Origin: Blastocystis sp. Blastoise
Lineage: Eukaryota > Protista > Bigyra: Opalinata
DNA length: 64,000 bases
Assembly (NCBI GenBank): GCA_039096225.1
Contig: JBBPEB010000028.1
Coordinates: 682,001-746,000, forward strand
Reading direction: 5' to 3'
The notes under the pieces were generated by a model. The model was not told the origin of the DNA. It made no database searches and saw only the letters and a list, made by a program, of their open reading frames with translations. The translations under genes were made by a program, and so were the position numbers. This document shows positions 51,315-57,472 of this stretch, piece after piece; position 1 is the stretch's first letter, and every line of letters starts with the position of its first letter.

Positions 51315-52745
51315 TGTATATACTTTGTTTTATCAAAAATATAAAAAATATCTGTCGGAAAAACGGTTGATAAACCCATGTTTCTCGTTTTTAATTTTGT
51401 ATTCTTTTAGAATCACATAATAATTGTGATTCTTACGGAAAAGTAAAGAAAAACAACCAAAAAACCATTTTTTCACAATGGAGAAACAAACAACAATAAC
51501 AGAGAAATATGAGTAACTTTATAATATTGCCTAATGTGATGCAATCAAAATGAAATTTATTAAATTTTACTAACGCTTGTATTCTGAAAATCACTTGAAA
51601 TAGCAAATAAGTTGTTTTGAGAAAAAAAATACAAAATCATGTAATTAGTAATTGAATTTCAGAGTTAAGTATCTTAATATAATAGTAAATATCTTACTCT
51701 ATATTTTTAGTCCATCCAGATAGAGGATAATTATAGTTTGCATGGATAATCGACATAAAGTTGTATTAGTTTCATGTGATTATTATGCAGATAGTTCTTT
51801 CAAATAATTTGTGTTCAAATAATTATTATTATAGAATGTTTATGTACATTTCGTTTATAACTATATGTATAGTCTGAATTCTTGGATAATATTAATTATT
51901 GAATATCTTCACAAATATCTCTGTATTTATATTGATGAAATGTTTGTATTAAAAAAAAACAAGTAAGTTATGATTCCATTTGATAATGGTCATTTTTCGT
52001 TGTTTATTCTTTTTTTTTTACTATTTTTAAATCATTAATAATACTGTAAATTCTTAGAATGTATACTCAAGAAGATTTAAATACGATTCAACGAAATAAA
52101 CCTAAATTTATTCAACTCTTATTATTATCAGCATTATTCTAGTAAAAAAAAATTATTATTATTGAGTTTGTCACTCATATAGAGTATTTATATTATTTGT
52201 AATGAATTTATTAATGATGTAGAAACCAAAATGAGGATATGAGTCAATTAAAAGCATAAGCATCCTTTGTATAAATCTTTCTAAGATGCCTAGCATATAT
52301 ATTAATTAAATATTTACCCGATAAATTATATTTTAAAGAATTTTGAATCTCTTCTTTTCTAACAATAAATTTAAAGATATAAAAAGGATACTTTATTCTT
52401 CTGTTTCATTAGAATTCTTTTTTACACGTCATCCAGCTGGTTTTTAACATATTTATTTATATGGTCTAGAATTCAAATTTCTTCTGCTTAAAGCCATCGA
52501 AAGTAACAAAGATAATAGTTGGCATTTCATGAAGAATTCTTAAGACTTATCATTTAAAACAAATAAAAAGAATATCCAATCAAAAATGTCACATGAAATT
52601 AATTCCACTGGAAGACTATTCTTTGGAATTCTTTTCTGGACGTTTTGATTTGGTGTTTTTTCTATTTTTGCTTTTCATGAAAATAAAAATCGAAATGGAT
52701 TCATAATTAATTTATATTAGATTTTCTTTGTTTTTATCTAAACTA

Positions 52746-53845
52746 ATGTTATATTTAGAAAGTGTATGTTTATAGGTAATCACTATAACAATATATAGAT
52801 ATCCAATCCTGTTGGAAGTTGTGATGTTGAGACACTTGGTGGTAAAGGGTATTCATTGGTAAAATTAACAAAAGGTGGTTTTCCTGTTCCTGGAGGCTTT
52901 ATTATAACCACTGAAGGCTATAGAGCTTTTGAATCAAAGCTTTGTTTGACTGAGAAATATAAGGACGTTCACTTACGTACTACTTTTTCTCTTCAAGATG
53001 CTGAAGATATTAGTGAAGAAATCATTGCGTTATTTAGACAAAGTCCATTTCCTGATGAATACTTGGATGATATAAAAGCATATATTCTAAAGATGAAGAA
53101 TAATCCGTTATTTGACATCAATTTCGTGGCAATTCGTTCTTCTGCAACAACTGAGGATCTTGGAGATGCTTCTTTTGCTGGTATGCATGATACTATTATT
53201 AATGTGCCTATTGAAATGGATGCAATTGAAAAGAATGTTATTGAATGTTGGGCATCATTATATACTCCTCGTGCAATTCTGTATCGATATGAAAAACATT
53301 TCCCTATTATTGATTCCTCTATTGCTGTTGTAGTTCAAAGAATGGTACCCTCTCAAAAGTCTGGTGTTATATTTTCCTGTGATCCTGAAACAAGTTCTCG
53401 AGAACATATTTCTTTAGATGGAGTTTTAGGATTAGGTGAAGCTTTAGTAAGTGGAATGGTAAGTACAGATCATTGGTCTATACGTAAACATTTCCCTATT
53501 TCTTATAATAAGACAGAATTAAAGATTGTTGAAAGTATTATTAATACTCAACAATATGCTTTATATACAAAGAAAGAAGGAGGTACAGAAAAGAGGGAAT
53601 TGGGTGAAGAAGGAAAGAAACCCTGTTTTACTGAAGAAGAAGTAGGTTTTTATTTATTATTATTATTATTCTGTATATAATTATTAATATATATATTTTT
53701 TGTATAGATATATAAAATAAGTCAGTATTCAGTTGATGTTGAGAAATATTATGGAAAACCGATGGATATGGAGTTTTGTATATATAAAGATCAAATCTAT
53801 TTAGTTCAAGCAAGACCTATTACTACTTTATTAGAAATACCTGAT

Positions 53846-53878
<33 letters not shown>

Positions 53879-54162
53879 CTTATAATAATAATATATATAG
53901 ATTTAAATCCATTATCTTCCTCTTTTAAGCCTGAATATCATGCTTATGTTGGATATAATTATTTACAAATGTTAACTTGTCCTTGGACTTACTGTAGTTA
54001 CTGTAGTTACGTTGATTTCTTTTTTAAAGATTATCAAATGGTTCGATATATAGGTGGATATGTATTTACAGAAACGGCAGCATCTTTATATGTATCGCCA
54101 TTACGTAATTTATGTTATAGTATATTTGAAAGACTAATGGATCCAGAAGTTATTGATGTATA

Positions 54163-54248
<86 letters not shown>

Positions 54249-54858
54249 TTATATAGATTTCAAAAGAGTATTTACAGTCTGATTTTCCATATTATTCATC
54301 TACCATATCTATAAAAGCATTTACAAAATCAATATTTGATATAGCCAGTTATATTCCAAGGAAATTTATATATTATTGGTTTCTTCATTTTAATAGTGAT
54401 GATATTAATAATGAAGTTAAATTAATGTCAAAAGAAATATTAGATTATAATAATAATTTAATAAAAGAATTGAAAAATAATTCTAATCATACTATTACTC
54501 TTTCTTCTTTAAGAAAAAATCCTTATACACATGTATATATACTTCAACATATTCTGCCTTTCTTTGTAATGTCTATCATGTCTCAAATGAAAATTGTTGA
54601 AATGTTACAGAAATATGGAATGAAAGAAGTCGATTTTGATGCTATTTATAGTGGTCGAAGAGAGAATATCGCGAATAAGATGAATTTCTTAGTTGCTGAA
54701 TTACATTCTCTTATAAATCAATGTGATCAAGAAGAAAATGGATTCACAGAGAAGTTATTAGTATATATATATTGTTATATTAGTATAATAACTTAATAGT
54801 AGTATTCTTATATATATATATTGTTATAATTAGTATAACAACTTAATATTAGTATTCT

Positions 54859-54893
<35 letters not shown>

Positions 54894-56124
54894 TATCAAA
54901 GAATGAAGAGGAAGAAACGATAAAAACATATATATCCTCTCTCTCTTCATCTACTCTTGTATCCCATAAACAATTTTATGAAAAATGGAATGGATTTATG
55001 GATATATTTGGTAGAAGAGGACCAGGTGAAGTTATGATTGAAACTCCTAGGTATGTTGAATGTATTATTAATAATAATTATTATTATACTTTATATTATT
55101 ATACTATACTTATTATTAATATTCTTCTTTTAGTATTAGTATGATATTTCTTGTCTATTATATATACTACTATATAGATATGAAGAAAAGCCATCCCTGA
55201 TTATTCAGATGGTTATTAATACTTCATTTACAGATATAAATGAAAAATCCCCGGATGCTCTGGAAAGAAAAGCAGATGAAGCCGTAGAAGAAGTATATAT
55301 GTATTATATATAGACATTCAAATTTATAATATATACTCTCTATACTAAAAATAATCAATATAAATTATATTTTTTTTATTATAAAAATCACAACAACTTT
55401 CTTTATATAGTTATGCTCTAGAATATCTCCTTCTGATGCTGCAAATCTCCGTTATTATCTCCCTGTAGCACGTGTACTTTTTGAATATAGAGAACATCCT
55501 AAATATTTTGTTGTTTCTGCATTAATTTCAAAACGTATTGTTATATTAAAATTAGCAGATAAAATGTTAAAAGAAGGTATTATATCGGAACGAGATGATG
55601 TTTTCCATTTCTCTCTCGATGAATTATGTGATTATGAACAAAATAAACTTGATATTCCATCTATTCTACCTATTATAGCTGAAAGAAAACGAGTTTATAT
55701 TCGTGCTAAAACTATTCGTTCACCTCGTTATATTACTTCTGCTTATACTGCTATTGTAAATGTCTCTCAAAAAACAAAAGATGAAACAAAGAATTTACCT
55801 GAAAATGTCTTAAAAGGAATGCCTACGTCAGCAGGTATAGTTGAAGGAAGAGCCGTAGTTGTTACTGACCCTAAAGAAGGCCATTTACAAAAAGGTGATA
55901 TATTAGTAGCTGAAGCTGCTGATCCTGGTTGGACTCCATTATTTGTACCTGCTTCTGCTGCTGTTATTGCTATAGGTGGTCCTCTTACTCATGGCTGTAT
56001 TGTAGCTAGAGAAATAGGTATTCCATGTGTTATTAATGTACAACATCTTATGGAAAGAATCAAAACAGGAATGAAATTGAGAGTTGATGGAAGCAAAGGT
56101 ACTGTTGAAATATTAGAAAATTAA
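52746..56124 (+). CDS. Rifamycin phosphotransferase-like (RPH-architecture) PEP-utilizing dikinase, 8 exons
   Basis: N-terminal ATP-grasp domain (LGGKG, VAIRSSATTEDLGDASFAG, AVVVQRMV, GLGEALVSG, QARPITTL), a central substrate domain (FGRRGPGEVMIETPRYEEKP, YREHPKY) and a C-terminal swivel His domain (DPGWTPLF...GGPLTHGCIVAREIGIP, His codon 55990-55992). Seven GT-AG introns are present, the first at 52764-52798. Confidence 0.88.
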
Positions 56125-57472
56125 AGAAGATCCATAAATCGATTATATCTATTATTGATATTGATTATATCAATACTTTCTATAAAGTGTATGCTGACCT
56201 TTGTTTACTTTATTTGTTCTATGAGTTTTTAATTATTTATTCAAGCCAATATATATTGAGCTTTGTTATATGATATGGTAATGATTCTTAAGAGTATTTA
56301 TAAATAAATATTCTCAACATTTCTAAAAATAATGAATTCTATTATAATATTTTTTAATAAAATGGTTGTATACATTATTATAAATATGACAATGGTTTTA
56401 ATAATTAAATGATCGAAAATATAAAATGATAATGCCATTAATTATCTTTATGTCGATTTTTATCATGTTTTAAATATCCTCTGAGCTATTCAATTATCGC
56501 TGATATTATAATATTAAATATATATTGTGGTAATTGTACAGAAACTAATTAAGAATTTACATTTTTCATCTAATCTATTAAACAAAGCATCATCATCTAG
56601 AGTAACTCAATACATAATTTTATAAATACAAAAACAACTATAAAAAGCAAATTTCGATGAAAATAAAAAAATAATTTTTTCAAAATTTTTATTTTTTAAA
56701 AAGTTTTTATTTTTATAAATCTATATAATTATATATATAATCCTTTCAAAATACTTAAAAAATACTTTATATATCCTTTCACTTCTCTCATTTATTATTT
56801 TATCATGATAAACTGATAATAATATCAAATACAAGAATCAACAAAATTTTCAATTCTATTCAAGATTTATTATTTCTCTGTGGATTATAATATGCTAGAA
56901 CATTTCCTTCTTAACCGGTGAACAACGTATTGCATGAATTATAATCAAAAGTGACTTTAAAGTACATTTCAAATTATTGTCCTTTTGATTGATTTCTTCA
57001 TATGTCTCGATTCTATACTCTATTTCAAATAATTCAAAAAGTATATTCTTCTCTATTATTTTTATATTCCAAAAAAAAAAACAAATTTTTCTTTATTTTG
57101 TGCTCAACTTTAGTATTTCGATTCTCTATAAGACTGTTGAACGATAATCTATTAGTGGATTCATTTATAGTGAACATAATTTTAGCAAATCTTCAAAAGT
57201 AAAATAGTATAACGGTCTTAAAACATGATAGAGAAACATTATTAATAAAAAGACTTGATAGCCAATAGAAACGATGCTAAAATATCCTCATGTTTTATTT
57301 ACTAAGAAAATCTACTAAAACAATAATCTCTATTTTTTTAAATTTTAGTATATAAATTGCTATAAACAGTTATAATTTTATAGTGTATGGATATTTCAAA
57401 TGAATATATCTTTTCTTCAAAGTTCTTTTCATATTATTATCCCAATAGAGACAATATTTATCGTTTTAAACA

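What the first reader, a model, noticed from the sequence alone, without database searches (positions are those of the whole stretch)
52746..56124. Eukaryotic, intronised homolog of bacterial rifamycin phosphotransferase
Seen: the domain order is ATP-grasp / substrate domain / C-terminal phospho-His, the frame is intact with 7 spliceosomal introns, and the codon usage is host-like. Established: PEP synthase and PPDK place the His domain centrally, whereas the C-terminal arrangement with the motifs G.R..GE.....R..E.P, YRE.PKY and DP.WTPLF typifies RPH antibiotic-inactivating kinases and their relatives. Inference: an old lateral transfer from bacteria gave a probable gut protist a small-molecule or xenobiotic kinase, possibly inactivating rifamycins. 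The substrate domain is diverged, so the substrate may differ.
Basis: partly seen in the sequence, partly recalled or inferred. Interest (0 to 1): 0.82.

Follow-up and report, generated by a model that had tools for sequence, protein, structure and literature searches.

The report
RPH-type dikinase gene family in Blastocystis
This is a real, intron-containing gene of a tortoise-gut Blastocystis that encodes an enzyme built like the bacterial rifampicin-inactivating kinase; it is one of at least 13 copies whose substrate-binding part varies most, so it probably phosphorylates other small molecules rather than rifamycins.

Summary
Observation confirmed. Window 52746-56124 (+) holds an 8-exon, 7-intron gene of 916 codons. 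All introns are GT..AG. Every exon translation matches the GenBank protein WA158_001784 ('hypothetical protein', Blastocystis sp. Blastoise) exactly.

Domain order is ATP-grasp, central domain, C-terminal phospho-His swivel. An AlphaFold model (pLDDT 90.5) superposes over its whole length only on Listeria rifampin phosphotransferase.

- It belongs to the RPH-type dikinase superfamily and keeps all catalytic residues tested.
- It fails every curated family cut-off (RPH model 430 bits, cut-off 999).
- Most rifampicin-contact positions differ.
- An AU test rejects a sister relation to the validated Bacillota RPH clade (p 0.0004-0.004).

New here:
- The genome holds at least 13 paralogs. The annotated models map onto the same seven intron positions; some have lost a few.
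- The central domain is the most divergent part among them.
- A near-twin copy shows purifying selection.
- Relatives with introns at some of the same positions occur on ~40% GC metagenome contigs.

Outside this clade only prokaryotes match, so an old transfer from prokaryotes is likely. The clade is sister to all sampled prokaryotes, not nested, so the donor is unresolved.

Two other first-reader notes flagged paralogs elsewhere in this genome. Substrate unknown. Moderate interest.

The parts
52746..56124 (+). Whole gene: 8 exons, 7 introns, 916 codons plus stop. Equals GenBank WA158_001784 (P0185).
52746..52763 (+). Exon 1, 6 codons including the ATG. It is followed by a 35-nt GT..AG intron (52764-52798).
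   Evidence: The annotated paralog models also map from residue 6-9 onward, as expected if a short first exon precedes.
52799..53846 (+). Exons 2 and 3 (52799-53641, 53708-53846) with intron 2 (53642-53707): the ATP-grasp (PPDK_N) domain. The Lys22 codon is at 52844-52846.
53901..55713 (+). Central domain, residues 334-780. It is equivalent to the rifampicin-binding domain of RPH. It spans exons 4-7 (53901-54157, 54257-54760, 54890-55050, 55178-55292) and the first part of exon 8. It is the most divergent part of the protein.
   Evidence: No local Pfam or NCBIfam hit exon by exon. Precomputed Pfam PF27448 (Rph_4th) is listed on P0185. Fold matches RPH-Lm over the whole length. Identity by domain.
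55486..55506 (+). YREHPKY motif holding Arg706, Glu707 and Lys710. These are the equivalents of RPH-Lm Arg666, Glu667 and Lys670, which hold the transferred phosphate.
   Evidence: PMC4844700
55714..56121 (+). C-terminal phospho-histidine swivel domain (residues 781-916). The catalytic His873 codon CAT is at 55990-55992.
54164..54246 (+). (ATT)n microsatellite that fills most of intron 4 (54158-54256).

Best explanation
This is a functional nuclear gene of a tortoise-gut Blastocystis. It encodes a three-domain dikinase of the RPH type.

Inferred mechanism, by homology with RPH-Lm:
1. The ATP-grasp domain binds ATP.
2. His873 on the C-terminal swivel domain takes the beta-phosphate, releasing AMP and phosphate.
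3. The swivel domain moves to the central domain.
4. There Arg706, Glu707, Lys710 and Gln356 position the phosphate for transfer to a hydroxyl group of a small molecule.

The substrate is unknown and is most likely not a rifamycin. The gene is one of at least 13 paralogs, and the central, substrate-binding domain differs most between them. I therefore favour a family of kinases with differing specificities for plant or microbial secondary metabolites met in a herbivore's gut. That is an inference, not a result.

The family most likely came from a prokaryote long ago. It gained seven introns before it multiplied, and it has taken on the composition of host genes.
For: Real, constrained gene:
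- My model is identical to the GenBank model.
- The record's authors describe an annotation pipeline tuned to favour models whose introns are supported by RNA-seq (PMC10690189).
- Against the twin copy on contig C4, dN/dS is 0.14 outside residues 334-587 and 0.38 inside them.
- All 13 copies keep open frames in the two large exons.

RPH-type enzyme:
- Domain order.
- Listeria RPH is the best solved relative by sequence, E 1e-103.
- It is also the only full-length structural match, TM 0.75/0.81, to a model with pLDDT 90.5.
- The equivalents of Lys22, Arg117, Thr136, Gln337, Arg666, Glu667, Lys670 and His825 are all kept.

Not rifamycin-specific.

Diversifying substrate domain: between main-group paralogs identity is 70-76% in the ATP-grasp domain, 31-48% in the central domain and 71-77% in the swivel domain. 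Pocket positions differ from copy to copy.

Old in the lineage:
- The annotated paralog models map onto the same seven intron positions, including the most divergent one (P0047); several models lack one to four of them.
- Contigs of about 40% GC from metagenomes carry relatives. One has 32-34-nt introns at positions 2, 4 and 5, and two have a splice-acceptor-like sequence at the intron 1 site.
- These contig sequences fall among the Blastoise paralogs in the trees.

Prokaryotic origin: outside this clade only bacteria and archaea match, at 32% identity or less.
Against: - No substrate was tested and none can be read from the sequence.
- Residue mapping in the central domain rests on an alignment at about 18% identity.
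- The tree puts the clade beside, not inside, the sampled prokaryotes. The direction and date of transfer therefore rest on taxon distribution alone.
- Eukaryotic proteins annotated as PEP synthase in arthropods and cnidarians, which I recall from memory, were not sampled. They did not appear among the best hits.
- The link to plant or microbial metabolites is an analogy with RPH, YvkC, phenylphosphate synthase and HpeHI. It is not evidence.
Confidence: 0.6

Rival explanations
1. It is a true rifamycin phosphotransferase that inactivates rifamycins made by gut actinomycetes.
For: Same architecture and fold as RPH-Lm. The catalytic set is kept. Many top full-length bacterial hits are Bacillus RPH proteins.
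Against: It scores 430 bits against the 999-bit cut-off of the RPH equivalog, and 293 against 1700 for the second RPH model. Gln336 and most hydrophobic rifampicin contacts are replaced, and they vary between paralogs. A sister relation to the validated Bacillota clade is rejected, p-AU 0.0004 and 0.0036. Stogios et al. found that a distant homologue (clade N) gave no rifampicin resistance (PMC4844700). From general knowledge, rifamycins target bacterial RNA polymerase, which a plastid-less eukaryote does not depend on, so the benefit is unclear.
Confidence: 0.05
2. It is a biosynthetic activating enzyme like PigC or RedH. It would phosphorylate an endogenous intermediate so that it can be condensed, rather than detoxify a foreign compound.
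For: PigC and RedH share the architecture and match at E 1e-96 and 1e-89.
Against: Scores of 324 and 300 bits lie far below the cut-offs of 1300 and 1350. I saw no partner biosynthetic genes beside it in the window; the long open frames on either side were not identified as such. Thirteen copies with a variable central domain fit many substrates better than one pathway step.
Confidence: 0.1
3. It is a non-catalytic or regulatory protein, like the PPS-like regulator PspR of haloarchaea.
For: Such a role exists in the superfamily (abstract of PMC10948481). One paralog, P0047, has lost the Arg/Glu/Lys/Gln set. The two copies on contig C19 lack about 200 residues of the ATP-grasp domain.
Against: The window's copy keeps every catalytic residue tested and evolves under purifying selection.
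Confidence: 0.05
4. It is a PEP synthase or PPDK of central carbon metabolism, as the NCBI names of its bacterial relatives suggest.
For: The ATP-grasp and swivel domains match PEP synthase models.
Against: There is no PEP/pyruvate-binding C-terminal domain. The His domain is terminal, not central. PpsA and PPDK structures match only the ATP-grasp part. RPH itself does not use pyruvate (PMC4844700).
Confidence: 0.01
5. Rival on origin: the family is an old eukaryotic gene inherited vertically and lost from most eukaryotes. It was not transferred from prokaryotes.
For: The clade is sister to all sampled prokaryotic RPH-type proteins, not nested. It has a long stem, seven old introns and at least two host organisms.
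Against: No named eukaryote other than this Blastocystis is among the best 120 full-length hits of two searches or among the first 26 of the 150 best representatives (only 20 of the 150 were looked up by name). No named human-subtype Blastocystis protein appears either. Placements nested with either prokaryotic clade are not rejected, p-AU 0.15 and 0.10. A basal position is what long-branch attraction to the outgroup would produce.
Confidence: 0.12

Closest known systems
Rifampin phosphotransferase RPH-Lm of Listeria monocytogenes (PDB 5FBS/5FBT/5FBU, 5HV1; Stogios et al. 2016, PMC4844700)
   Same: Three domains in the same order. It is the only full-length fold match, TM 0.75/0.81. It is the best solved relative by sequence, E 1e-103. 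The ATP-site residues, the phosphate-holding Arg/Glu/Lys and Gln, and the catalytic His are kept.
   Different: Residues 343-572 of RPH-Lm do not align by phmmer. Central-domain identity to B. cereus RPH is about 18%. Most rifampicin contacts are changed. The host is a eukaryote, the gene has seven introns, and it is one of 13 paralogs.
PRK06241-type 'phosphoenolpyruvate synthase' proteins of bacteria and archaea (NCBIfam NF004878, NF004877 and related models), the wider RPH superfamily of uncharacterised small-molecule dikinases
   Same: Best profile match over the whole length (residues 12-915 against positions 12-890 of 891) and the same Pfam set: PPDK_N, Rph_4th, PEP-utilizers.
   Different: 518 bits against a cut-off of 945. 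It forms a separate clade with a long stem of 0.8-0.9 substitutions per site.
Other characterised relatives: flavonoid phosphate synthetase YvkC of B. subtilis (cited in PMC13099321), the HpeHI hydroxyphenylethanone kinase (PMC12167813; PDB 9GOJ), and PigC/RedH
   Same: The same ATP-grasp plus phospho-His chemistry acting on hydroxyl groups of aromatic or polyketide small molecules. 9GOJ matches the ATP-grasp domain.
   Different: These have different central domains or subunit make-up. PigC and RedH scores are far below cut-off. I did not place YvkC in my trees.
Lateral gene transfers into Blastocystis (Eme et al. 2017; Lind et al. preprint PMC10690189)
   Same: The same organism and the same kind of event. 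The preprint reports ongoing bacterial gene gain, including six transfers unique to the tortoise lineage.
   Different: This family is not among the six tortoise-specific transfers named in the preprint's text. Its supplementary tables and the Eme paper were not readable here.

Membership tests
Rifamycin-inactivating phosphotransferase (RPH; NCBIfam NF041857; clade A of Stogios et al. 2016) | Domain order: ATP-grasp, central substrate domain, C-terminal swivel His domain | tested here: met
Rifamycin-inactivating phosphotransferase (RPH; NCBIfam NF041857; clade A of Stogios et al. 2016) | Catalytic His825; ATP-site Lys22, Arg117, Thr136; phosphate-holding Gln337, Arg666, Glu667, Lys670 | tested here: met
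   All are kept in P0185.
Rifamycin-inactivating phosphotransferase (RPH; NCBIfam NF041857; clade A of Stogios et al. 2016) | Whole-protein score at or above the curated equivalog cut-off | tested here: not met
   430 bits against 999 (NF041857) and 293 against 1700 (NF000283).
Rifamycin-inactivating phosphotransferase (RPH; NCBIfam NF041857; clade A of Stogios et al. 2016) | Conserved rifampicin-contact residues (Gln336, Tyr351, Thr354, Pro356, Ala357, Met359, Val368, Leu387, Leu478, Phe479, Met673) | tested here: not met
   About 2-3 of 11 are kept, and the positions vary between paralogs. The alignment here is of low identity, so single positions are uncertain.
Rifamycin-inactivating phosphotransferase (RPH; NCBIfam NF041857; clade A of Stogios et al. 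2016) | Placement in or next to the experimentally validated clade | tested here: not met
   Trees. The AU test rejects this clade plus Bacillota RPH as one group, p 0.0004 and 0.0036.
Rifamycin-inactivating phosphotransferase (RPH; NCBIfam NF041857; clade A of Stogios et al. 2016) | Phosphorylates rifamycins | not testable with these tools
   Needs an enzyme assay.
RPH-type small-molecule dikinase superfamily (Pfam PPDK_N + Rph_4th PF27448 + PEP-utilizers) | All three Pfam domains present and an RPH-like fold of the central domain | tested here: met
   Precomputed Pfam on P0185 lists PF01326, PF27448 and PF00391. The local Pfam copy lacks PF27448. Whole-length fold match to 5HV1.
PRK06241.1-3 subfamily (NCBIfam NF004878) | Score at or above the curated cut-off | tested here: not met
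   518 bits against 945.
PEP synthase / pyruvate phosphate dikinase | Central His domain followed by a C-terminal PEP/pyruvate-binding domain (PF02896) | tested here: not met
   No such domain in P0185. The His domain is at the C-terminus. PF02896 was not found anywhere in the genome by a six-frame search.
Prodigiosin-type ligases PigC / RedH | Score at or above the curated cut-off | tested here: not met
   324 bits against 1300 and 300 against 1350.
Gene acquired by lateral transfer from prokaryotes | Relatives outside the recipient clade are prokaryotic only | tested here: met
   Limits: only the best 120-150 hits are listed, candidate lists were capped, and 20 of the 150 representatives were looked up by name.
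Gene acquired by lateral transfer from prokaryotes | Recipient clade nested inside a donor clade with support | tested here: inconclusive
   The clade is sister to all 32 (or 23) sampled prokaryotic rows. Nested alternatives are not rejected, p-AU 0.15 and 0.10.
Gene acquired by lateral transfer from prokaryotes | Truly integrated in the eukaryotic genome, not a contaminant | tested here: met
   Seven spliceosomal-type introns. Host-like GC3. A 944-kb contig. Paralogs on nine contigs.

The most novel reading that the evidence does not exclude
Blastocystis and its relatives carry an expanded, eukaryote-specific family of phospho-histidine dikinases. Their fast-diverging central domains would give each copy its own small-molecule target. 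Together they would form a phosphorylation-based detoxification or metabolite-handling system for plant and microbial compounds in the herbivore gut. Such a system has not been described in any eukaryote.
Probability: 0.35. Interest if true: 0.65.

Novelty: new member of a known kind. Interest (0 to 1): 0.45.

Why it matters
RPH-type dikinases are described as a large, mostly unexplored group of bacterial and archaeal enzymes (PMC4844700). Here the same enzyme type is a settled, intron-bearing, multi-copy nuclear gene family in a gut eukaryote. In GenBank its members are all labelled 'hypothetical protein'.

If the copies act on different compounds, they would show how a gut protist handles dietary or microbial chemicals. 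They would also give a natural series of 13 related substrate domains for learning what sets specificity in this enzyme class.

The case also warns against reading 'RPH-like' as 'rifampicin resistance gene' in resistome surveys of gut metagenomes that contain protists.

Tried and rejected

Trees:
- The 'careful' treekit tree never finished.
- The AU test under the mixture model never finished.
- An IQ-TREE ultrafast-bootstrap run timed out (one search failed on thread count).
- I therefore rely on quick mixture-model trees, FastTree and fast LG+F+G4 searches of 32 rows with AU tests.
- Rows left out of the 32-row set: P0163, P0170, P0047, P0105, P0082, P0141, P0320, P0318, P0422, P0041, P0023, P0034, P0196, P0188, P0316.

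Literature: the supplementary tables of the genome preprint and Eme et al. 2017 were not held. I could not check whether the family is already in a published transfer list. No paper links Blastocystis with RPH-type enzymes in the searchable library.

Identity of the ~40% GC organisms:
- Neighbouring genes on L013-L015 gave no usable Pfam hit and no match in this genome.
- Sample accessions are in no paper.
- One more relative, L028, also has about 40% GC and split frames.

Rejected readings: contamination, PEP synthase, and a sister relation to validated RPH. Reasons are given above.

Spliced model: searches were made exon by exon by reference. Whole-protein steps used the stored GenBank protein P0185 only. 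Inside scripts the exons were concatenated only to count length, stops, GC3 and dN/dS.

Full report
**What is there**

The window is very AT-rich, 16-30% GC per 2 kb. Reading 52500-56400 and translating the frames gives an 8-exon gene on the + strand. The exons are 52746-52763, 52799-53641, 53708-53846, 53901-54157, 54257-54760, 54890-55050, 55178-55292 and 55411-56124.

The gene has 916 codons and a single terminal stop. The seven introns are 35-129 nt long, all start with GT and end with AG, and have 2-23% GC against 31% in the exons.

Each in-frame exon piece is found exactly, and in order, in stored protein P0185. P0185 is NCBI 'hypothetical protein WA158_001784 [Blastocystis sp. Blastoise]', 916 aa, on a contig of 944,498 bp.

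The preprint that describes these genomes reports that models were built with RNA-seq, with scoring tuned to favour strictly RNA-seq-supported introns (PMC10690189).

**How the spliced model was searched**

I sent no joined model to any search. Whole-protein steps used the stored GenBank protein P0185. Inside scripts the exons were concatenated only for counting.

**The organism**

Cluster look-ups name the paralogs as Blastocystis sp. Blastoise. The assembly has 33.3 Mb in 34 contigs. This fits the Russian-tortoise isolate Rus-B of PMC10690189: 33.3 Mb, 33 contigs, 23.1% GC, and introns longer than in the human subtypes.

GC3 of the gene is 0.149. The median for other long open frames in the window is 0.134. 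The gene's composition is therefore that of the host.

**Domains and fold**

- PPDK_N covers residues 17-328 and the PEP-utilizers mobile domain covers 839-909.
- The last exon aligns to the C-terminal end of RPH-type profiles but to the middle of the PEP synthase profile. This confirms the C-terminal position of the His domain.
- Taken singly, exons 4-7 match no local Pfam or NCBIfam model. The precomputed Pfam list for P0185 does include PF27448, named Rph_4th.
- Against solved structures, the best relative by sequence is Listeria RPH, E 1e-103. Residues 19-362 and 620-915 align, and RPH-Lm residues 343-572 are left unaligned.
- An AlphaFold model built on a 38-row alignment has mean pLDDT 90.5 and pTM 0.86.
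- Foldseek finds only RPH-Lm entries over the whole length: 5HV1, E 3.6e-52, TM 0.75/0.81. PEP synthase and PPDK match just the ATP-grasp part.

**Catalytic residues against substrate residues**

I used B. cereus RPH (P0256) as a ruler for RPH-Lm numbering. Its motif block is offset by one residue, and it reproduces the published contact residues. On this alignment P0185 keeps the equivalents of Lys22, Arg117, Thr136, Gln337, Arg666, Glu667, Lys670 and His825 (residue roles from PMC4844700).

Of the eleven rifampicin-contact positions, about two or three are kept. Gln336 is Leu. The same positions differ from paralog to paralog. This part of the alignment has only about 18% identity, so single positions are uncertain. 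The overall picture is not.

**Curated family cut-offs**

| Model | Score (bits) | Cut-off (bits) |
|---|---|---|
| PRK06241.1-3 | 518 | 945 |
| RIF_Ptrans_rph | 430 | 999 |
| second RPH model | 293 | 1700 |
| PigC | 324 | 1300 |
| RedH | 300 | 1350 |
| PEP_synth | 309 | 740 |

The protein is a member of the superfamily but of none of the curated families.

**A gene family, not a single gene**

Six-frame searches of the genome with exon 8 and with exon 2 each find 13 places on nine contigs. All have open frames, at 38-100% and 37-100% identity.

Mapping ten annotated paralog proteins, and P0185 itself, onto their loci shows the same seven intron positions. In P0185 numbering they lie near residues 6/7, 287/288, 333/334, 419/420, 587/588, 641/642 and 679/680. 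The most divergent copy, P0047, has all seven; P0003 lacks one. The introns therefore predate the duplications.

Some copies have lost introns cleanly. P0001 keeps only introns 1, 2 and 5. Its partner P0151, more than 90% identical and about 45 kb away on the same contig, keeps introns 2, 3, 4, 5 and 7; its 5' end is annotated differently, so intron 1 could not be compared.

Identity to P0185 among main-group paralogs, by domain:
- ATP-grasp: 70-76%
- central domain: 31-48%
- swivel domain: 71-77%

**The near-twin on contig C4**

A copy lies at C4:1623658-1627153. Only the gene itself is duplicated, at 93% nucleotide identity. The pair is a mosaic:

| Region | dS | dN | dN/dS |
|---|---|---|---|
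| residues 334-587 | 0.29 | 0.11 | 0.38 |
| the rest | 0.05 | 0.007 | 0.14 |

Both parts are under purifying selection. The different dS values point to gene conversion of the flanks, or to a swap of the central part.

**Relatives elsewhere**

A HMMER scan of 1.84 billion representatives with exon 2 gives first the Blastoise paralogs, then a few unnamed metagenome proteins at 44-66% identity, then a plateau of proteins at 42% or less; those I looked up by name were bacterial or unnamed.

Word searches with full-length paralog P0001 and with P0006 list the following:
- Blastoise proteins
- P0006
- bacteria and archaea at 32% identity or less: Bacillota RPH, Clostridium, Anaerolineae, Polyangiaceae, haloarchaea, Bathyarchaeota

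No other named eukaryote and no named human-subtype Blastocystis protein is listed.

The metagenome relatives lie on contigs of about 40% GC:
- L015 has GT..AG or GC..AG introns of 32-34 nt at positions 2, 4 and 5 of the Blastoise gene, a frame change near position 6, and a splice-acceptor-like sequence at the intron 1 site.
- L013 is intron-free after that same acceptor-like site.
- L014 has introns of about 100-150 nt, one of them near position 4.
- L028 also has split frames.

These are therefore eukaryotes, related or not to Blastocystis. I could not name them.

**Phylogeny**

In a 60-row tree the RPH-type proteins (860-940 aa) form a group with SH-aLRT 100. It is separate from the shorter and longer families and from PpsA-like rows. 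Inside it, the Blastoise paralogs plus the ~40% GC sequences form one clade: support 100, stem 0.89. The metagenome sequences are interleaved among the paralogs.

With more prokaryotic diversity (47 rows), the clade is sister to all 32 prokaryotic RPH-type rows. This holds in the quick mixture-model tree (support 90), in FastTree (0.92), and in an LG+F+G4 tree of 32 rows. The validated-type Bacillota RPH clade sits deep inside one prokaryotic clade.

AU tests:
- This clade plus Bacillota RPH as one group: rejected, delta lnL 38.9, p 0.0004 and 0.0036.
- This clade with prokaryotic clade B: not rejected, p 0.15.
- This clade with prokaryotic clade A: not rejected, p 0.10.

The gene is therefore not a close relative of known rifampicin kinases. 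Transfer from prokaryotes is the simplest reading of the distribution, but the donor is unresolved and nesting is not shown. [quoted passage not shown]

**Likely function**

Shown:
- architecture and fold
- the complete catalytic set
- purifying selection
- expansion of the family, with the central domain the most divergent part

Inferred by homology with RPH-Lm: a swivelling phospho-His mechanism that turns ATP into AMP and phosphate and places the beta-phosphate on a hydroxyl group of a small molecule.

Characterised relatives act on rifamycins, flavonoids (YvkC, cited in PMC13099321), hydroxyphenylethanones (HpeHI, PMC12167813) and pyrrole aldehydes (PigC). From my own knowledge, phenol (phenylphosphate synthase) belongs on this list too.

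For a protist living in the hindgut of a herbivorous tortoise, phosphorylation of plant or microbial secondary metabolites is the most plausible role. It is a hypothesis only.

A rifamycin role is unlikely. The reasons are given above, and a plastid-less eukaryote has no obvious rifamycin target (general knowledge).

**Novelty and score**

The enzyme type is known, and transfers into Blastocystis are known. What is new:
- the RPH-type dikinase exists as an old, intron-bearing, 13-copy family in a eukaryote
- relatives occur in other unidentified eukaryotes
- the central domain is the most divergent part among the copies

I found no paper describing this. The published supplementary lists could not be read.

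Two other first-reader notes of this scan flagged RPH-like genes on other pieces of this genome. These fit the paralogs found here.

I rate it a new member of a known kind, interest 0.45.

Noticed in passing
G000:C25:760962-765446 (L025), protein P0047: The most divergent paralog keeps all seven introns (up to 586 nt), an open frame, Lys22, Arg117 and the catalytic His. It has lost the phosphate-holding set: Arg to Ser, Glu to Gln, Lys to Leu, Gln337 to Phe, and Thr136 to Pro. It may be a pseudo-enzyme or have another role.
   Followed up: partly
G000:C19:126643-129147 and C19:70185-72590 (L026, L027), proteins P0187 and P0189: An inverted pair of paralogs about 55 kb apart lacks roughly residues 89-285 of the ATP-grasp domain, including the Arg117 and Thr136 equivalents. 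The rest of each gene is kept open.
   Followed up: partly
G000:C32:134849-137851 (L020, P0001) and C32:89961-93087 (L018, P0151): Two copies in one 90%-identity protein cluster differ in intron content. P0001 has cleanly lost introns 3, 4, 6 and 7; P0151 has lost only intron 6. This points to recent, precise intron loss, as another report of this scan noted for Helitron copies.
   Followed up: partly
Window 52570-56137 against G000:C4:1623658-1627153: A single-gene duplicate at 93% nucleotide identity with a mosaic pattern. Exons 4-5 differ by 11-14%, while the other exons and most introns are about 99% identical. This suggests gene conversion or exchange of the substrate-domain segment.
   Followed up: yes
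G000:C1:316088-319388 (L022), protein P0184: This paralog is annotated with a 190-residue N-terminal extension that carries a SAP domain (PF02037). It could be a real fusion or two merged gene models.
   Followed up: no
Whole genome G000: A six-frame search for the PEP/pyruvate-binding domain PF02896 found nothing, although all 14 control genomes matched. This tortoise Blastocystis may therefore lack PPDK and PEP synthase, or split exons may hide them.
   Followed up: no
Dozens of places across the genome match it at 67-83% nucleotide identity.
   Followed up: no
L015:953-986: On the ~40% GC metagenome contig, the intron at the position of Blastoise intron 2 is 34 nt long and appears to start with GC rather than GT.
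   Followed up: no
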